Shown piece after piece: positions 1,026 to 25,140 of a stretch of 49,531 nt of DNA. A model generated the notes under the pieces. It was not told the origin of the DNA, made no database searches, and saw only the letters and a list, made by a program, of their open reading frames with translations. Origin of the DNA: Octopus bimaculoides (lineage: Eukaryota). The first letter of the stretch is position 1; every line of letters begins with the position of its first letter. Location of the stretch: contig NC_068981.1 of assembly GCF_001194135.2 (NCBI RefSeq), forward strand, positions 122,999,974 through 123,049,504. The letters run 5' to 3'. A program made the position numbers and the translations under genes.

Positions 1026-1036
1026 TTATTTGCTTC
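1026..1036 (-). CDS. whitnin: Terminal coding exon of the precursor (G|GA AGC AAA TAA = G-S-K-stop), followed by 3' UTR
   Basis: Strong acceptor tttacattttattttatttttacag|GA completes the phase-1 Gly codon; it is the best polypyrimidine tract found downstream of the 4284 donor; stop after 3 codons gives a length typical of the family. Confidence 0.75.
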
Positions 1037-1716
1037 CTGTAAAAATAAAATAAAATGTAAACGTAAATCGGTGAATTGAAGTGGAGAGAACATCTTTTTT
1101 TTTTCTAAACTATCACTTACACGGTTTACACATTATAGCGTATTAAATGTTTATTTTTGATATATGTATGCGTGTGTGTGTGTGCATGTGTATGTCTGTG
1201 TATGTTTGTGTGTGTGTGCATATACGCATATACATGCACACACATATCTAAAAACAAAAAAATACATTGACCCAGCAATACTTTACACACATCTAGTTTG
1301 CGCTGAAATGCGTCTACATTTTTAGAATGTGATTTCCTCTCTCTGAAATTGTTTACTTATACTTACGCTTACAACACGTTGTGTAAGCTGGGTACGAAAC
1401 AGTTTGCTGTGCAATACAACTCCAAGAGCATGCGTTAAATGTTTGTTTGTCTGGTTTGCAGGAGTGTATATATATATATATATATATATTATTTAATAGA
1501 TACAATATATGTTTATATGTGGTACTAATACTTTCATATGTTGAGAAATACCTCAAACATATTCATGAGGCACAAACTACATATAACTTTTTGCGTTTTT
1601 TCTCTCATTCCATTTTTAAACATGTATTGTGTCTATTAGATAATATTTATCTCTCACCAGATAGAGTACTTTTTTGTTGATCTTACCATCATGGAACAGT
1701 ACATTATATATATGTT

Positions 1717-1830
1717 TGTGTGTGTGTGTGTGTGTGTGTGTGTGTGTGTGTGTGTGTGTGTGTGTGTGTGTGTGTGTGTGTGTGTTTGTGTGTGTGTGTG
1801 TGTGTGTGTGTGTGTGTGTGTATGTGTGTG
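1717..1830. repeat. (TG)n microsatellite, about 110 nt
   Basis: Direct reading; two interruptions. Confidence 0.95.
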
Positions 1831-2016
1831 TAGTTGAATAAAATTTGGCTTAAAAGCTCGTCTACAATATTTTTAACCCAATGATATCATAGAGTGAGAA
1901 TACACTTCTCACTGGATATACACCTAAAATTTCTTAATCTCTCTAGCGTTTATAAACAGATAAAAGAGAATAGACTGGACGACATAAAGAATGTTCAATT
2001 CATTTTCAATGATTCA

Positions 2017-2062
2017 TCTCTCTCTCTCTCTCTCTCTCTCTCTCTCTCTCTCTCTCTCTCTC
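2017..2062. repeat. (TC)23 microsatellite
   Basis: Direct reading. Confidence 0.95.
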
Positions 2063-4284
2063 ACACTCATTCATTCTGTAAGTATGTATATATGCACACA
2101 AATGTTCGTGCTTTTCTTTGGTATTCCTGGATGGGTTAAAAAGTTATAATGATAAGAGCGCACATAGTACCCCATTTTGTGTAAGTCTTTGTGTGAAAGA
2201 AATATGATTCATATCGTAATGCAACAATTGTCACATAGCTTCCTTAAAAAGAAAATTTGGGGCAGGCCTTTTGATCAACAAAGAGCCAGAATAGGCTCTG
2301 ACATTCAAAAACGCTTTTTGCATTCTATGTTACAATGTGATTTTATAGATTTTTGTTGTAAATGCACGGCATGCGACAGGATAGCGTAATATTTGTGTAA
2401 CTGATGTAAAGGTTTGGCACGTGAACTTTCCATATTGAAATATCCATATTTCATTAATTGCCTGATGGTCTTTCTCTTTGTAGAGACATATGATATCATT
2501 TTTGATTCTGCACCTTTTGTGATATAGTGTAACTGACAGTTTGTTATTACATGCGATAATTATTGTGCTCTATACGCTTTTGATTTTATATTTGTCCGTT
2601 TTGCAGCAACGAAGAATTTGATCCATGCATTATACTATATATCGAGTTTCTGTGTCTTGACTAGTCTTTTTATGGACCCTCTATAGTAGAGAATTTGTTC
2701 TGCTAATGATTGGCAAACGTAAAAGATTCGTTTCCTTTCTTAATTTTTTTCTTTTTTTGTAATCGAAATTTTCAAATATTGTTTCATACGGAAGAACATA
2801 CAATATCCTAGCTTAGAATAGACATTTGTGAGTGATTTTCATGTATACTAAATTACTATATTTTCTCGTTCTAATTCATATGTATATATCTACAAATCGG
2901 GTTTGCAGCTTGAATGCATATTAAACTTGTATTTTAAATNNNNNNNNNNNNNNNNNNNNNNNNNNNNNNNNNNNNNNNNNNNNNNNNNNNNNNNNNNNNN
3001 NNNNNNNNNNNNNNNNNNNNNNNNNNNNNNNNNNNNNNNNNNNNNNNNNNNNNNNNNNNNNNNNNNNNNNNNNNNNNNNNNNNNNNNNNNNNNNNNNNNN
3101 NNNNNNNNNNNNNNNNNNNNNNNNNNNNNNNNNNNNNNNNNNNNNNNNNNNNNNNNNNNNNNNNNNNNNNNNNNNNNNNNNNNNNNNNNNNNNNNNNNNN
3201 NNNNNNNNNNNNNNNNNNNNNNNNNNNNNNNNNNNNNNNNNNNNNNNNNNNNNNNNNNNNNNNNGCGTGTGTGTGTGTATGTGTGTGTGTGTGTGTGTGT
3301 GTGTGTGTGTGTGTATTACTGCGTATATGTATACGAATACAAACAAGATGACGGTAATACATTATACCAATGTTATACAAGTGACTAATATTGGGATATT
3401 TTAACAAATATATTTCACTCTAATATTTAAGTATTAACGATGGCAAGAAATACTGATAGATATATTATGGTTATTTGCTTAACAGAGCTCATGTTGTTCT
3501 TATGAGGCAACGCTGCCCCCAGATAGACGATGGAGTAAGCGTTGAATTCTAATATATAACATTCTAATTGTTGCCGAAACTCACATCAGTATTAAGAATT
3601 CTTGATCGGCATTTCGGATGATGTTAATGAATTTGTTTACATTTATATGCGTTGACTACAGCATTAGAGCAATTAGCACTTATTTCTAACAATGCAGGTG
3701 TTCCTAACACCCTAGTCTTACACACACACACACACACACACATAGACACACAGACACACACACACACACACACACACGCACACACACACACACACACACC
3801 ACACCACACAACACATACAAACACACACAAAATATATTAATGCAATAGAAATAATTATCGGCTTTATAAGGTGAGATTTATAATAAAGATATAATTTTCT
3901 CTGCATGCATTTATATTTCAAATGTATAGACTTGTGAATGTGTATGTGTGCGTGTGTTTTACTTAAGCCTATTACTTTAACGCTACCTTAAAAATAACAA
4001 CGGATCCATGAATATATACGATCTCTTGCGATAAACACACGTAATTTCATGACCTTTAATGTTCAAGGAAATTTTTAACTGCGATATTAGGCCAGCTCAT
4101 CTCCACGACCTGGCCTAATAGTACAGAATTCGGTAGGTTCCTGTTTGTTTTCACAATTATTCAATGCGCTTTAGAAAGAAGTAAATCGTTTATCACGAAG
4201 TAACAGATTCAAAACTAAGTTTCCTGTTAATGCTATTTATACTAACTTCACCAAAAAAATAAAAGCATTGGAAATTATATGTAC

Positions 4285-22778: not shown

Positions 22779-22786
22779 TGACGTCA
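22779..22786. promoter_or_regulatory. Perfect palindromic CRE (TGACGTCA) in intron 2
   Basis: Exact match to the CREB/ATF consensus; function not shown. Confidence 0.35.
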
Positions 22787-23784
22787 TAAGGATATTATAA
22801 GCTTTCTAGAGAACGTCAGATAAATATTTTGTGGAAATTCGCTTTCGAGGCACTATGTATAATACTATATAAATACTGGTTTGAGAACCTATTTTGGATA
22901 AAAGTGAAAGTCTGTCCGTGAGACTCAATTCCCTGTCTGTTATAATACAGGTGACGTGCGTTTGACTTCTATAGGAAAACTTCGACATTTTCTATCCAAA
23001 ATGGTATTTCAGCCCAATATTTGCATGCAAGTATTTAGAGTTCCAATGTTCTAAAAATAGATATGTAAGTGCGCGTGTATGTATATATATATACACACAC
23101 AGACCAAACATACACGCTTCATGTATGTACATCTATCTGAAAATAGATGTCTGTCTCATATTCAAAGTAGTTTTACATTAGTTATTTACATTAGTTATTA
23201 CTGTTTTACGTCCACGAATTCTTCGTGTTTTCTGAAACCTTTGGAACGATGTCGTCATGTTTCATAGCTTCAAGTTAGAATTTACTTGATTTCTATTCTG
23301 TATGAAGCATTCTAATTATTTTTATTCCCAAAAATATATTTTAAAAAAATTACCGCCCGGAAGAAATTTTTAAGAATCTATTGTGCGTAATGCAATAGTC
23401 TCTGAGGCAAAAACGCTATTAATATCATGAAATTAATTACAGAACAGCAGCTTAATTACTATCACACGTATAGGGTCATTATGTATTTAGACCAGGCTAA
23501 CAAACTTGAAAATTTGATGTACTTATATAAGAAATTATATTGAATCTACAGTTTGTTTCATTGGCACTTGTATGTTTAATGGATATTTCAACGCGCTATA
23601 TTTTGAACTTTATAAACTAAACTTAGAAACGATATCATATATTTCATTAAGTGAATTGTCATTCCGAAGAATCTGTCATTTTTTTTTATCAAAAATACCA
23701 ATAATAACAATGCAAAGAATGTTTATAAGGAACTAGCAGATTATGAACGATATCAACACAAATATTAGTACCATGTGAGCCTAC

Positions 23785-23886
23785 CTGTTCAAGATGGCTT
23801 CTGGCATCTGCTGCTGGTGCTGATAGAGCTGGTGACGTCAGCAGGAAGAGACAAACACTAACTAATGCAATTAATCGACAGTCCAT
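23785..23886 (-). CDS. whitnin: Whitnin/PKYMDT precursor coding exon: signal peptide and start of first peptide (MDCRLIALVSVCLFLLTSPALSAPAADARSHLEQ)
   Basis: Acceptor tttttctttcattgcag|CAAACA-ATG (exon starts 23892); hydrophobic core LIALVSVCLFLL followed by an ALS|AP cleavage-type motif; donor CAG|gtaggc at 23784; 102 nt, phase 0. Confidence 0.92.
23833..23840. promoter_or_regulatory. Perfect CRE (TGACGTCA) inside the signal-peptide exon
   Basis: Exact consensus match overlapping the Leu-Thr-Ser codons; function not shown. Confidence 0.25.
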
Positions 23887-25087
23887 TGTTTGCTGCAATG
23901 AAAGAAAAATTAAGTTATATAGTAAAAAAGAAAATTTGATTTAATTACGAAAAAATCTTTTTGTTTGATAAACGTACATATTTGCCGTTTTGTACGACTT
24001 CTTTTAGTCCCTCTCATTGACATTGTTTTATTCACACACACGCACACGCACACACACACACATACACATACACACACAAACACAGACGTGCATACACACA
24101 ATCACACATGCGCAACCAGACACGTGAACACAAATATATATATACATATATATAACATACATAAATGCATATACATATACTCACACGTATAGATGTTTGT
24201 CTGTGTGTGTGTATGTATATATGTATATGTATATATAAATGGGTGTGTATGTGTGTTTGAGTGCAATTTATCTGTGTGTATAAAACGATTCACTGCACAG
24301 TAAAATGATGGTTACGAAAACATAACATTTCCCTATTCTCATTAACAGTATAAGGATATATTTTCACTGGCTTCAGAGAAAGAAACCATTAATTTTTTCT
24401 TAAAAAATTAATAAACTTTACAATCATTGTTTCTCAACTAGTAATCATTATTATACGCTCGCCTTTCATTTATACCAGACTACAGAAATGTGTGTTTGTC
24501 ACACATGACGTTTTGTATGTATGTATGTATGTATGTATGTATGTATATATGTATGTGTGTATGCATGCATGTACGCATGTGCGCGTGTAGGTATGCATAC
24601 ATAGATATACGAATGCATGCATGTATGTATTTGTAACAGAGTGTTTTTGTTGTTGGCTTAATGCGCATCATTGTCAATGTCATCAACAGAATCAAATGAA
24701 TTAATATGTATATAATTCTCTGTATATGAATGTGTGTGTGAGTGTGTGTGTGTGTTAGTGTGTGTGTGTAAGTGTGTGTGTGTGTGTGTGTGTGTAGGGG
24801 AGCACGCGCCTGCACTTGCGTGCGTATATACTTACCACCACGACTACTACCACCACCGCTGCCACCACTACCATCATCATTATAATCATTATCGTTGTCG
24901 TTATATTGTCATCGGTTACCGTCAGCATTATCGTTATCTATCGCATATAGAAATCAGAATTGTTGTAATCGTTGCTTTTATTTTGATTTTAGTCCTATTT
25001 GTCTCTTTTGCTATTGTCATTACGAGAAGAGTAACAATGGAGAATATTGCCCAACTGAGTATAAGAATATTATCAACGTTTGCTTAC

Positions 25088-25140
25088 CATTGTTTCTTGC
25101 TGTATTCTATTGCTTATCTGTTTTCCTTCCTCAAAACGTT
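25088..25140 (-). other. Putative first (mostly 5' UTR) exon ending in ATG; 5' boundary unknown
   Basis: acaATG|gtaagc strong donor at 25087; splicing to the 23892 acceptor gives in-frame ATG CAA ACA ATG GAC (MQTMD...). A competing donor gtg|gtaagt exists at 24835. Confidence 0.5.

What the first reader, a model, noticed from the sequence alone, without database searches (positions are those of the whole stretch)
1026..25090. Hidden spliced whitnin/SPTR/PKYMDT (proctolin-like) neuropeptide gene spanning 24 kb
Seen: four short exons with canonical splice sites join into a 115-aa precursor with signal peptide, KR and GKR cleavage sites, PKYMDT and a disulfide peptide. The ORF track shows only parts of it and misses the PKYMDT exon. 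Established: PKYMDT/whitnin/SPTR precursors are known from gastropods (Aplysia whitnin, Lymnaea SPTR, Lottia PKYMDT) and have been proposed to relate to arthropod proctolin. Inference: this is the cephalopod orthologue, yielding up to four peptides: APAADARSHLEQSKDVPLS, PKYMDT, DPQ...GVP-amide and GHQG...QSGS(K).
Basis: partly seen in the sequence, partly recalled or inferred. Interest (0 to 1): 0.7.

Follow-up and report, generated by a model that had tools for sequence, protein, structure and literature searches.

The report
Octopus whitnin (PKYMDT) neuropeptide precursor gene

Summary
On the minus strand, four exons (23886-23785, 6813-6718, 4423-4285, 1036-1026), all with AG/GT borders, join into the 115-aa protein MDCRL...QSGSK. 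An RNA-derived contig (Logan SRR16213286) has exactly these three junctions. All six assembly gaps lie in introns, and their flanks are collinear with the gap-free O. sinensis locus.

The window is O. bimaculoides chromosome CM046601.1. The protein is identical to RefSeq XP_014786911.1, "uncharacterized protein LOC106881140 isoform X2". It belongs to the whitnin/SPTR/PKYMDT family: BLASTP against Aplysia whitnin gives 37% identity and E 5e-25, and the KR-PKYMDT-R motif, the linker and the two-Cys C-terminal peptide are all shared.

Corrections:
- The gene is not hidden. Schenk et al. 2019 (eLife) already list XP_014786911.1 in their whitnin/proctolin alignment.
- A conserved 12-nt alternative micro-exon (21115-21104, MLSP) gives the 119-aa isoform X1.
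- The upper bound of 25090 has no support. The non-coding first exon lies about 45 kb upstream in O. vulgaris, which would put it outside the window.
- The link to proctolin is weak here (hhalign probability 5%).

One mRNA A-to-G mismatch (Q111R, position 4290) could be RNA editing or a SNP. Novelty: already known. Interest: low.

The parts
23785..23892 (-). First coding exon. The acceptor AG is at 23894-23893, followed by 6 nt of 5'UTR (23892-23887). The ATG is at 23886-23884. Codons 1-34 cover the signal peptide MDCRLIALVSVCLFLLTSPALS and the start of the N-terminal peptide. The donor is GTAGGC at 23784.
   Evidence: sequence, translation. (L005 nt 365-472 are 100% identical). (100% identical to O. 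sinensis, including the flanks). (hydrophobic core LIALVSVCLFLL with mean Kyte-Doolittle 3.18; A-L-S at positions -3 to -1).
21104..21115 (-). Alternative 12-nt micro-exon ATGCTATCTCCG (MLSP), flanked by ..tatcAG and GTGAGT. Including it gives the 119-aa isoform X1 and lengthens the N-terminal peptide to APAADARSHLEQMLSPSKDVPLS.
   Evidence: one match in the window, one at the syntenic place in O. sinensis, differing by one synonymous base. (RefSeq XP_014786903.1 and XP_036357538.1 carry MLSP between EQ and SK). I found no transcript contig that contains it.
6718..6813 (-). Coding exon for aa 35-66: SKDVPLS-KR-PKYMDT-R-DPQDIFKDLVYLTLQQ. This is the PKYMDT exon. It is phase 0 at both ends.
4285..4423 (-). 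Coding exon for aa 67-112 plus the first base of Gly113: LVSEGKVTPDVMTGADIGVP-GKR-GHQGLCLRRTASQRFIAYPCWQS. It holds the amidation signal and the two-Cys loop (Cys95, Cys109).
   Evidence: Gene-caller fragments from other species begin '..Q|L[VI]xE' at the same point, which suggests a conserved phase-0 intron there (inference).
921..1036 (-). Last exon. It carries the end of the CDS (G-S-K-stop, TAA at 1028-1026) and the 3'UTR. The transcript contig follows the genome down to 921. The UTR probably runs on to the AATAAA at about 157-152; that extension is inferred.
   Evidence: Window 2-1489 is 92.4% identical to O. sinensis, against 79-89% in the introns.
4290..4290 (-). A in the genome, G in mRNA contig L005: CAG>CGG, Gln111>Arg in the C-terminal peptide. 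This is a candidate A-to-I recoding site, a SNP, or a species difference.
   Evidence: (P0058 reads ..CWRSGSK). Local folding shows no unusual structure (z +0.48).
1037..23784 (-). The introns between the coding exons (1037-4284, 4424-6717, 6814-23784). They contain all six N gaps of the finding: 2940-3264, 6979-7883, 9136-9331, 12065-12922, 13961-14245 and 22369-22724.
23893..49531 (-). The 3' part of the large first intron. The non-coding first exon (L005 nt 14-364) is not in this sequence. In O. vulgaris it lies about 45.4 kb upstream of the ATG exon.
   Evidence: (no match in the window or in 10 kb upstream in O. sinensis).

Best explanation
This is the coding portion of the Octopus bimaculoides whitnin (SPTR/PKYMDT) neuropeptide precursor gene, RefSeq LOC106881140.

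Shown here:
- Four constitutive coding exons and one alternative 12-nt micro-exon are spliced into a 115-aa or 119-aa prepropeptide.
- The mRNA exists with exactly these junctions.
- The protein is under strong purifying selection.
- It is homologous along its whole length to gastropod, bivalve, chiton and annelid whitnins.

Inferred from the sequence and from what is known of the family:
- The signal peptide is removed after Ser22.
- Prohormone convertases cut at Lys42-Arg43, at the single Arg50 and at Lys88-Arg89. Arg50 has basic residues at P6 and P8.
- Carboxypeptidase and PAM convert ..GVP-Gly into ..GVP-amide.
- Cys95 and Cys109 form a disulfide.

The secreted products would be:
1. APAADARSHLEQ(MLSP)SKDVPLS, in the position of the gastropod SPTR peptide.
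2. PKYMDT.
3. The 36-aa linker DPQ...GVP-amide.
4. The cyclic peptide GHQGLCLRRTASQRFIAYPCWQSGS, in the position of the gastropod ERYM peptide but not amidated.

These peptides most likely act as neuronal or neuroendocrine signals through GPCRs that are not yet identified.
For: Exons, splice sites and ORF.
Transcript with identical junctions.
Window is 100% identical to O. bimaculoides CM046601.1, where a gene with this 115-aa product is called.
Product is identical to XP_014786911.1, and isoform X1 carries MLSP.
Micro-exon conserved with its splice sites in O. sinensis.
Selection: 0 nonsynonymous and 2 synonymous differences in 360 nt, against 14% intron divergence.
Family.
Literature: whitnin = the SPTR gene = the PKYMDT gene. 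In Haliotis ganglia, mass spectrometry saw the SPTR peptide and the disulfide-bonded, amidated ERYM peptide (PMC3434067). PKYMDT-precursor peptides were seen in oyster peptidomics (PMC4200219). This octopus protein is listed among whitnins in PMC6377233.
Against: No peptide or expression data for octopus were available, so signal-peptide cleavage, convertase cuts, amidation and the disulfide are all predictions. SignalP could not be run.

PKYMDT itself was not detected by MALDI in Haliotis.

The Gly before KR is absent in the decapodiform-like cephalopod sequences and in gastropods, so amidation of the linker may have no function.

Arg97-Arg98 inside the Cys loop, and Arg29, could be further cleavage sites.

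Pfam has no model for the family, so membership rests on pairwise and profile similarity to named sequences.
Confidence: 0.95

Rival explanations
1. Strict proctolin orthology: PKYMDT is the cephalopod counterpart of arthropod proctolin (RYLPT) and signals through the octopus orthologue of the proctolin receptor.
For: This was proposed by Veenstra 2010, as cited in PMC3434067, PMC8557429 and PMC6377233. Both precursors share the layout x-Y-[LM]-x-T followed by a single Arg and then an amphipathic stretch ending near a Gly. hhalign aligns PKYMDT with RYLPT and the following helix in that register (P 0.0075). Spiralians have an orphan orthologue of the proctolin receptor.
Against: The hhalign probability is only 5.2%. 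No RYLPT-containing protein appears among the 52 profile hits in 1.84 billion representative proteins. The trimmed arthropod precursor sequences I compared show no Cys-loop C-terminal peptide, and they place the peptide at or near the signal-peptide cleavage site rather than after a KR site. Thiel et al. 2021 state that the ligand of the spiralian proctolin receptor is unknown.
Confidence: 0.3
2. Same gene, but the main hormone is the C-terminal disulfide peptide. PKYMDT and the linker would be processing by-products. This concerns only which product is bioactive and is compatible with the best explanation.
For: The Cys-loop peptide is the block best conserved between phyla. Octopus GHQGLCLRRTASQRFIAYPCW compares with annelid GRxQGFCFRKTxSGRFLPYICW, with the same C-x13-C spacing. 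In annelids PKYMDT is replaced by ATWL[DE]T. In Haliotis, mass spectrometry found the ERYM and SPTR peptides but not PKYMDT.
Against: KRPKYMDTR is invariant or nearly so across gastropods, bivalves, chitons and cephalopods. That is hard to explain for a spacer. Small hydrophilic hexapeptides are easily missed by MALDI.
Confidence: 0.35
3. Artefact: the join is a chance concatenation of short ORFs, a pseudogene, or a product of scaffold misassembly across the N gaps.
For: The exons are short (102, 96, 139 and 11 nt of CDS), and six gaps of estimated length lie inside the span.
Against: A transcript contig has the exact junctions. Identical 115-aa proteins are modelled in O. bimaculoides and O. 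sinensis, and the O. vulgaris model contains the same 115 residues behind an N-terminal extension. The locus is collinear with gap-free O. sinensis across every gap. The probability of so few differences under neutrality is about 5e-21. E is 5e-25 against Aplysia whitnin.
Confidence: 0.01

Closest known systems
RefSeq LOC106881140 (O. bimaculoides), XP_014786911.1 (X2, 115 aa) and XP_014786903.1 (X1, 119 aa); orthologues LOC115213793 (O. sinensis), CAI9715193.1 (O. vulgaris) and GAB1597956.1 (Argonauta hians)
   Same: It is the same gene. The window is 100% identical to the assembly, and the 115-aa product is identical to X2.
   Different: The databases call it 'uncharacterized' or 'hypothetical'. 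The O. vulgaris model adds a probably spurious 31-aa N-terminal extension read from the 5'UTR.
Aplysia californica whitnin precursor (NP_001191586.1 / AAV84472.1), Lymnaea stagnalis SPTR prohormone (AF129397_1) and Haliotis whitnin (AFN20273, QXP00690)
   Same: Similar length (about 115 aa). Shared layout: signal peptide, N-terminal peptide, KR-PKYMDT-R, the FKDLV..QELV.EG linker, KR, and a two-Cys C-terminal peptide. Identity to Aplysia is 37% over 113 aa, E 5e-25.
   Different: The gastropod C-terminal (ERYM) peptide has C-x12-C and ends ..SG(R/K), giving an amide. The octopus peptide has C-x13-C and ends QSGSK, so no amide is expected. Octopus, but not the gastropods, has Gly before the second KR, so the linker would be amidated. 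The N-terminal peptide sequences are unrelated.
Annelid whitnins (Platynereis whitnin-1 AHB62365, Capitella ELU07851, Hirudo neuron-specific protein AAB40925)
   Same: Same architecture. The octopus C-terminal peptide resembles the annelid type more closely than the gastropod type (G.xQG.C.R[RK]T.S.RF..Y.CW, with C-x13-C).
   Different: Annelids have R-ATWL[DE]T-R where molluscs have KR-PKYMDT-R.
Arthropod proctolin precursors (Drosophila AAF52572.2, Daphnia EFX69425.1, Tribolium EFA05689.1 and others)
   Same: A short non-amidated peptide ending in Thr with an aromatic residue at position 2-3, followed by a single Arg and an amphipathic stretch. Orthology has been proposed in the literature.
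   Different: The peptide is RYLPT, not PKYMDT, and it sits at or near the signal-peptide cleavage site. The trimmed sequences compared have no Cys-loop C-terminal peptide. Profile-profile similarity is not significant (probability 5.2%).

Membership tests
whitnin / SPTR / PKYMDT precursor | Significant full-length sequence similarity to named whitnin precursors | tested here: met
   BLASTP against Aplysia whitnin: 37% identity over 113 aa, E 5e-25. Profile search: Aplysia whitnin 6e-30, Haliotis whitnin 2.7e-22, Lottia PKYMDT fragment 4.5e-21.
whitnin / SPTR / PKYMDT precursor | N-terminal signal peptide | tested here: met
   By inspection only, because SignalP was not available. Arg4, then a 12-residue hydrophobic core LIALVSVCLFLL (mean Kyte-Doolittle 3.18), then TSPALS with Ala at -3 and Ser at -1. 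It aligns with the signal peptides of the homologues.
whitnin / SPTR / PKYMDT precursor | Dibasic site, then PKYMDT, then a single Arg, at the conserved position after the N-terminal peptide | tested here: met
   K42-R43, P44-T49, R50. The columns are invariant in the mollusc sequences, apart from one Y>C in P0003 and occasional M>L or D>E changes.
whitnin / SPTR / PKYMDT precursor | Conserved linker FK(D/E)LV...(Q/E)(E/Q)LV.EG..P | tested here: met
   DIFKDLVYLTLQQLVSEGKVTP aligns without gaps to molluscan and annelid members.
whitnin / SPTR / PKYMDT precursor | KR followed by a C-terminal peptide of about 25 aa with two Cys (disulfide loop) | tested here: met
   K88-R89, Cys95 and Cys109, C-x13-C as in annelids, against C-x12-C in gastropods. 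The disulfide itself cannot be tested here.
whitnin / SPTR / PKYMDT precursor | C-terminal amidation signal on the Cys-loop (ERYM) peptide, as in Lymnaea and Haliotis | tested here: not met
   Octopus ends ..CWQSGSK, with no Gly directly before a basic residue. The decapodiform-like sequences end ..RTGSK and the annelids ..CWKG[NDE]. This is therefore a gastropod trait, not a trait of the whole family.
whitnin / SPTR / PKYMDT precursor | Neuronal expression and mature peptides detectable by mass spectrometry | not testable with these tools
   Only an RNA-derived contig of unknown tissue is available (L005).
arthropod proctolin precursor | RYLPT pentapeptide immediately after the signal peptide, followed by Arg | tested here: not met
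   No RYLPT is present. PKYMDT lies 21 residues after the predicted signal cleavage, behind a KR site.
arthropod proctolin precursor | Detectable sequence homology of the precursors | tested here: inconclusive
   hhalign of 15 whitnins against 7 proctolin precursors: probability 5.2%, P 0.0075, 28 aligned columns in the expected register. No proctolin precursor appears among the 52 profile hits.
arthropod proctolin precursor | The peptide activates the proctolin-receptor orthologue | not testable with these tools
   The ligand of the spiralian receptor is reported as unknown (PMC8557429).

The most novel reading that the evidence does not exclude
Octopus may diversify its whitnin peptides after transcription. 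The alternative 12-nt micro-exon changes the N-terminal peptide. The A>G at 4290 may be an A-to-I recoding event that turns Gln111 into Arg in the cyclic C-terminal peptide, matching the basic residue (Arg or Lys) found at that aligned position in the decapodiform-like cephalopod sequences and in annelids. The unusually low synonymous divergence of the exons would fit constraint from RNA structure or editing. Separately, PKYMDT could be the missing ligand of the spiralian proctolin-receptor orthologue.
Probability: 0.2. Interest if true: 0.4.

Novelty: already known. Interest (0 to 1): 0.15.

Why it matters
It matters little beyond annotation. The locus could be renamed from 'uncharacterized protein LOC106881140' to whitnin/PKYMDT precursor. 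Cephalopod neuropeptide catalogues and single-cell brain atlases would gain a named marker.

The octopus sequence is useful for comparison. It combines the mollusc-type PKYMDT with an annelid-type Cys-loop peptide, which supports the view that the C-terminal peptide is ancestral.

The open question remains whether PKYMDT or the cyclic peptide is the ligand of the orphan spiralian proctolin-receptor orthologue. This finding does not make that question newly testable, because the sequence was already public.

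Tried and rejected
- Pfam scan of the 115-aa product: no family, even at E up to 10.
- Search for the 5'UTR exon of transcript L005 in the window, in L004 and in 10 kb upstream in O. sinensis: nothing found. It turned up about 45 kb upstream in O. vulgaris.
- An apparent intronless copy of the CDS 'upstream in O. sinensis' was my own artefact. The FASTA file L001.fa also held the transcript contig L002. No retrocopy exists in the fetched sequence.
- L005 nt 824-1441 contains an ORF with a CERK_C hit. 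It departs from the genome at 921, where there is no GT donor, and has no match within 10 kb downstream in O. sinensis. I treated it as a probable chimeric assembly.
- Folding 251 nt around the A>G site to look for an editing-type duplex: nothing beyond shuffled controls (z +0.48).
- Scan of the whole window for other genes: ORFs of 110 aa or more are only N runs and microsatellite translations. ARAGORN finds no tRNA. Rfam gives one marginal tRNA hit.
- The Sepia officinalis neuropeptidome paper (J Proteome Res 2016) is not in the library, so I could not check whether it already names a cephalopod PKYMDT/whitnin.
- Text searches for the locus and accession numbers found no paper. The only mention I found is in the eLife 2019 source data.

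Full report
**What is in the sequence.** The result is a 348-nt reading frame for a 115-aa protein: MDCRLIALVSVCLFLLTSPALSAPAADARSHLEQSKDVPLSKRPKYMDTRDPQDIFKDLVYLTLQQLVSEGKVTPDVMTGADIGVPGKRGHQGLCLRRTASQRFIAYPCWQSGSK, followed by TAA. Every internal border is canonical. The acceptors are ..cattgcAG..ctatttcAG..ctcttttcAG and ..atttttacAG. The donors are GTAGGC, GTAAGA and GTACAT. The intron phases are 0, 0 and 1.

**The assembly gaps.** All six gaps flagged by the scan's program lie inside introns: one in 1037-4284 and five in 6814-23784. I tested whether the scaffold is continuous across them using the orthologous O. sinensis locus (L001, no N at all). The window is collinear with it, in one orientation, from position 2 to 33482. 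Each gap is bridged by only 100, 707, 17, about 191, 111 and 33 bases in O. sinensis. No coding exon can be hidden in the gaps, because the 115-aa and 119-aa proteins modelled in the two species are identical.

**Source and existing annotation.** The window is 100% identical, gaps included, to Octopus bimaculoides GCA_001194135.2, chromosome CM046601.1, around 123.0 Mb. A gene whose CDS runs from window 23886 to 1026 and gives exactly this 115-aa product is on record there. The protein equals RefSeq XP_014786911.1, 'uncharacterized protein LOC106881140 isoform X2', and is identical to O. sinensis XP_029638511.1. The gene is therefore not hidden in public annotation. It is only unnamed.

**A fifth coding exon.** Isoform X1 (119 aa, in both species) has MLSP inserted between Gln34 and Ser35. 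I found its source: a 12-nt micro-exon ATGCTATCTCCG at 21115..21104, preceded by ..tatcAG and followed by GTGAGT. The same element sits at the syntenic place in O. sinensis with one synonymous change. I found no transcript contig carrying it, so how often it is used remains untested here.

**Transcript evidence.** A Logan contig from an RNA-like run (L005, SRR16213286, 1441 nt) encodes the protein with a single substitution. It matches the window at 100% in exons 1, 2 and 4. In exon 3 it matches at all positions but one, which is also the only mismatch against O. sinensis exon 3. It passes from exon to exon exactly at 23785^6813, 6718^4423 and 4285^1036. Five further mRNA-like contigs from other cephalopods (77% protein identity) carry uninterrupted orthologous CDSs.

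**Extent of the gene.** The 5' 364 nt of L005 end in ..CATTATAAAG and are absent from the window, from L004 and from 10 kb upstream in O. sinensis. In O. vulgaris this sequence maps as a single exon with a GT donor, 45.4 kb upstream of the ATG exon. The transcription unit is therefore much longer than 24 kb. Its non-coding first exon is expected beyond the window's end, and nothing supports 25090 as a boundary. Downstream, the transcript follows the genome to at least 921. Window 2-1489 is 92.4% identical to O. sinensis, against 79-89% for the introns, and an AATAAA lies at about 157-152. The 3'UTR therefore probably extends roughly 900 nt below the finding's start (inference).

**Selection.** Between O. 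bimaculoides and O. sinensis the 360-nt CDS, micro-exon included, has 2 differences. Both are synonymous. There are 0 changes in 272 nonsynonymous sites. In contrast, 19.4 kb of intron-dominated alignment is 86.0% identical. So few differences under the intron rate has P about 5e-21. Even the roughly 85 synonymous sites are under-diverged (P about 3e-4). This is a functional gene, not a pseudogene or a chance ORF.

**Family.** Pfam has no model for it. The word-seeded search found four relatives, one of which carries KRPKYMDTR at 40% identity.
- A profile of those relatives, scored against 1.84 billion representative proteins, gave 52 hits at E<=1e-3.
- Names recovered for the hits include 'whitnin precursor [Aplysia californica]' (6e-30) and 'whitnin [Haliotis discus hannai]' (2.7e-22).
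- Unnamed homologues come from Littorina, Gigantopelta, Mytilus, Saccostrea, Sinanodonta and the chiton Liolophura.
- Direct BLASTP against Aplysia whitnin gives 37% identity over 113 of 115 residues, E 5e-25.
- A second group of hits has R-ATWL[DE]T-R in place of KR-PKYMDT-R. Comparison with sequences listed by Schenk et al. identifies this as the annelid type, as in Platynereis, Capitella and Hirudo.

The octopus C-terminal peptide (GHQGLCLRRTASQRFIAYPCW, C-x13-C) is closer to the annelid form (GRxQGFCFRKTxSGRFLPYICW) than to the gastropod ERYM form (xYMGICM..., C-x12-C). Gene-caller fragments from genomic contigs of many species begin '..Q|L[VI]xE'. That suggests the phase-0 intron before LVSEG is conserved across the family (inference).

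**Likely mechanism (inferred).**
- Arg4, the 12-residue hydrophobic core and A-L-S at positions -3 to -1 predict signal cleavage after Ser22.
- Convertase cleavage at K42R43 and K88R89 is expected. Cleavage at the single R50 is also expected because basic residues sit at P6 and P8.
- G87 would be converted to a C-terminal amide.
- Cys95 and Cys109 would form a disulfide.
The N-terminal peptide becomes 23 aa in isoform X1.

In gastropods, mass spectrometry has shown the N-terminal (SPTR) peptide and the disulfide-bonded, amidated ERYM peptide, but not PKYMDT (PMC3434067). In oysters, PKYMDT-precursor peptides were detected (PMC4200219).

Two details differ in octopus. The Cys-loop peptide ends QSGSK and should not be amidated. 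The Gly before the second KR is present in Octopus and Argonauta but absent from the decapodiform-like sequences (VPNKR, VPSKR) and from gastropods. Linker amidation is therefore a lineage-specific feature of uncertain importance.

**Proctolin.** The orthology of PKYMDT and proctolin is a literature proposal (Veenstra 2010, as cited). Thiel et al. 2021 note that the ligand of the spiralian proctolin-receptor orthologue is still unknown. I aligned 15 whitnins and 7 arthropod proctolin precursors and compared the two profiles. The arthropod sequences came from the eLife source data and are trimmed. hhalign placed PKYMDT on RYLPT and matched the following helix, but with probability 5.2% and P 0.0075. 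No RYLPT protein is among the 52 profile hits, and the arthropod sequences compared show no Cys-loop peptide. 'Proctolin-like' therefore remains a hypothesis, neither supported nor excluded here.

**Novelty.** Schenk et al. [quoted passage not shown] The very protein encoded here has therefore already been recognised as a whitnin. I found no paper that names it in the main text. I could not read the Sepia neuropeptidome paper. The finding is correct, well reasoned from raw sequence, and already known.

**Side observations.**
- The single mismatch between transcript L005 and the genome is A>G at 4290 (CAG>CGG, Gln111>Arg). This is the direction expected for A-to-I editing, which from general knowledge is common in coleoid neural transcripts. 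The aligned residue is Arg in the decapodiform-like sequences and Lys in annelids. A SNP or a species difference is equally possible, and local folding gives no support for editing.
- One marine metatranscriptome contig has PKCMDT where a sibling sequence has PKYMDT. That difference is unresolved.
- The 3' 618 nt of L005, which carry a CERK_C-like ORF, leave the genome at 921 without a donor site and are probably an assembly chimera.
- Nothing else of note was found in the window: no further ORFs, no ARAGORN tRNA, and one marginal Rfam tRNA hit at 14728-14800.

Noticed in passing
window 4290 (- strand); L005 nt 701: This is the only mismatch between mRNA contig L005 and the genomic exons: A>G, CAG>CGG, Gln111>Arg in the Cys-loop peptide. 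It could be A-to-I recoding, a SNP or a species difference. The aligned residue is Arg in the decapodiform-like sequences and Lys in annelids.
   Followed up: partly
window CDS exons against L001 (O. sinensis): Synonymous sites are unusually conserved: 2 differences in about 85 synonymous sites, against 14% intron divergence (P about 3e-4). This suggests constraint at the RNA level, for example from splicing signals in short exons, RNA structure or editing.
   Followed up: partly
L005 nt 824-1441; the break is at window 921: The transcript contig leaves the genome at 921 ('CCATTTACTC|tcagg'), where there is no GT donor. It continues into an ORF with a ceramide-kinase C-terminal (PF19280) hit. 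That sequence has no match in the window, in L004 or within 10 kb downstream in O. sinensis. It is probably a chimeric assembly.
   Followed up: partly
P0003 against P0060 (marine metatranscriptome cephalopod-like transcripts): One contig encodes KRPKCMDTR where its near-identical sibling encodes KRPKYMDTR. A Tyr-to-Cys change would fit TAT>TGT, again an A>G change, and it lies inside the core peptide.
   Followed up: no
window 14728-14800 (+), inside intron 1: A marginal Rfam tRNA match (29.2 bits against a gathering score of 29, E 0.041) that ARAGORN does not call. It is possibly a tRNA-derived repeat or a pseudogene.
   Followed up: no
window 12923-13100, plus the edges of the gaps at 2940, 6979, 13961, 22369, 37304 and 40303: Long trinucleotide runs (homopolymeric Ile, Leu, Asn and Lys runs when translated) and (CA)n, (TA)n and (TACA)n microsatellites abut most of the N gaps. 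This probably explains why the assembly broke there. They also produce all the long 'ORFs' in the window.
   Followed up: no
window 25088-25090 (- strand): An ATG is followed directly by GTAAGC. No transcript or orthologous gene model uses it, and conservation there (84%) is at the intron level.
   Followed up: yes
L010 (O. vulgaris OX597814.1) 1001-13310: The O. vulgaris gene model (CAI9715193.1, 146 aa) starts translation in the 5'UTR exon, adding 31 residues in front of the conserved Met1. It spans 79.6 kb. The extension is probably an annotation artefact.
   Followed up: partly
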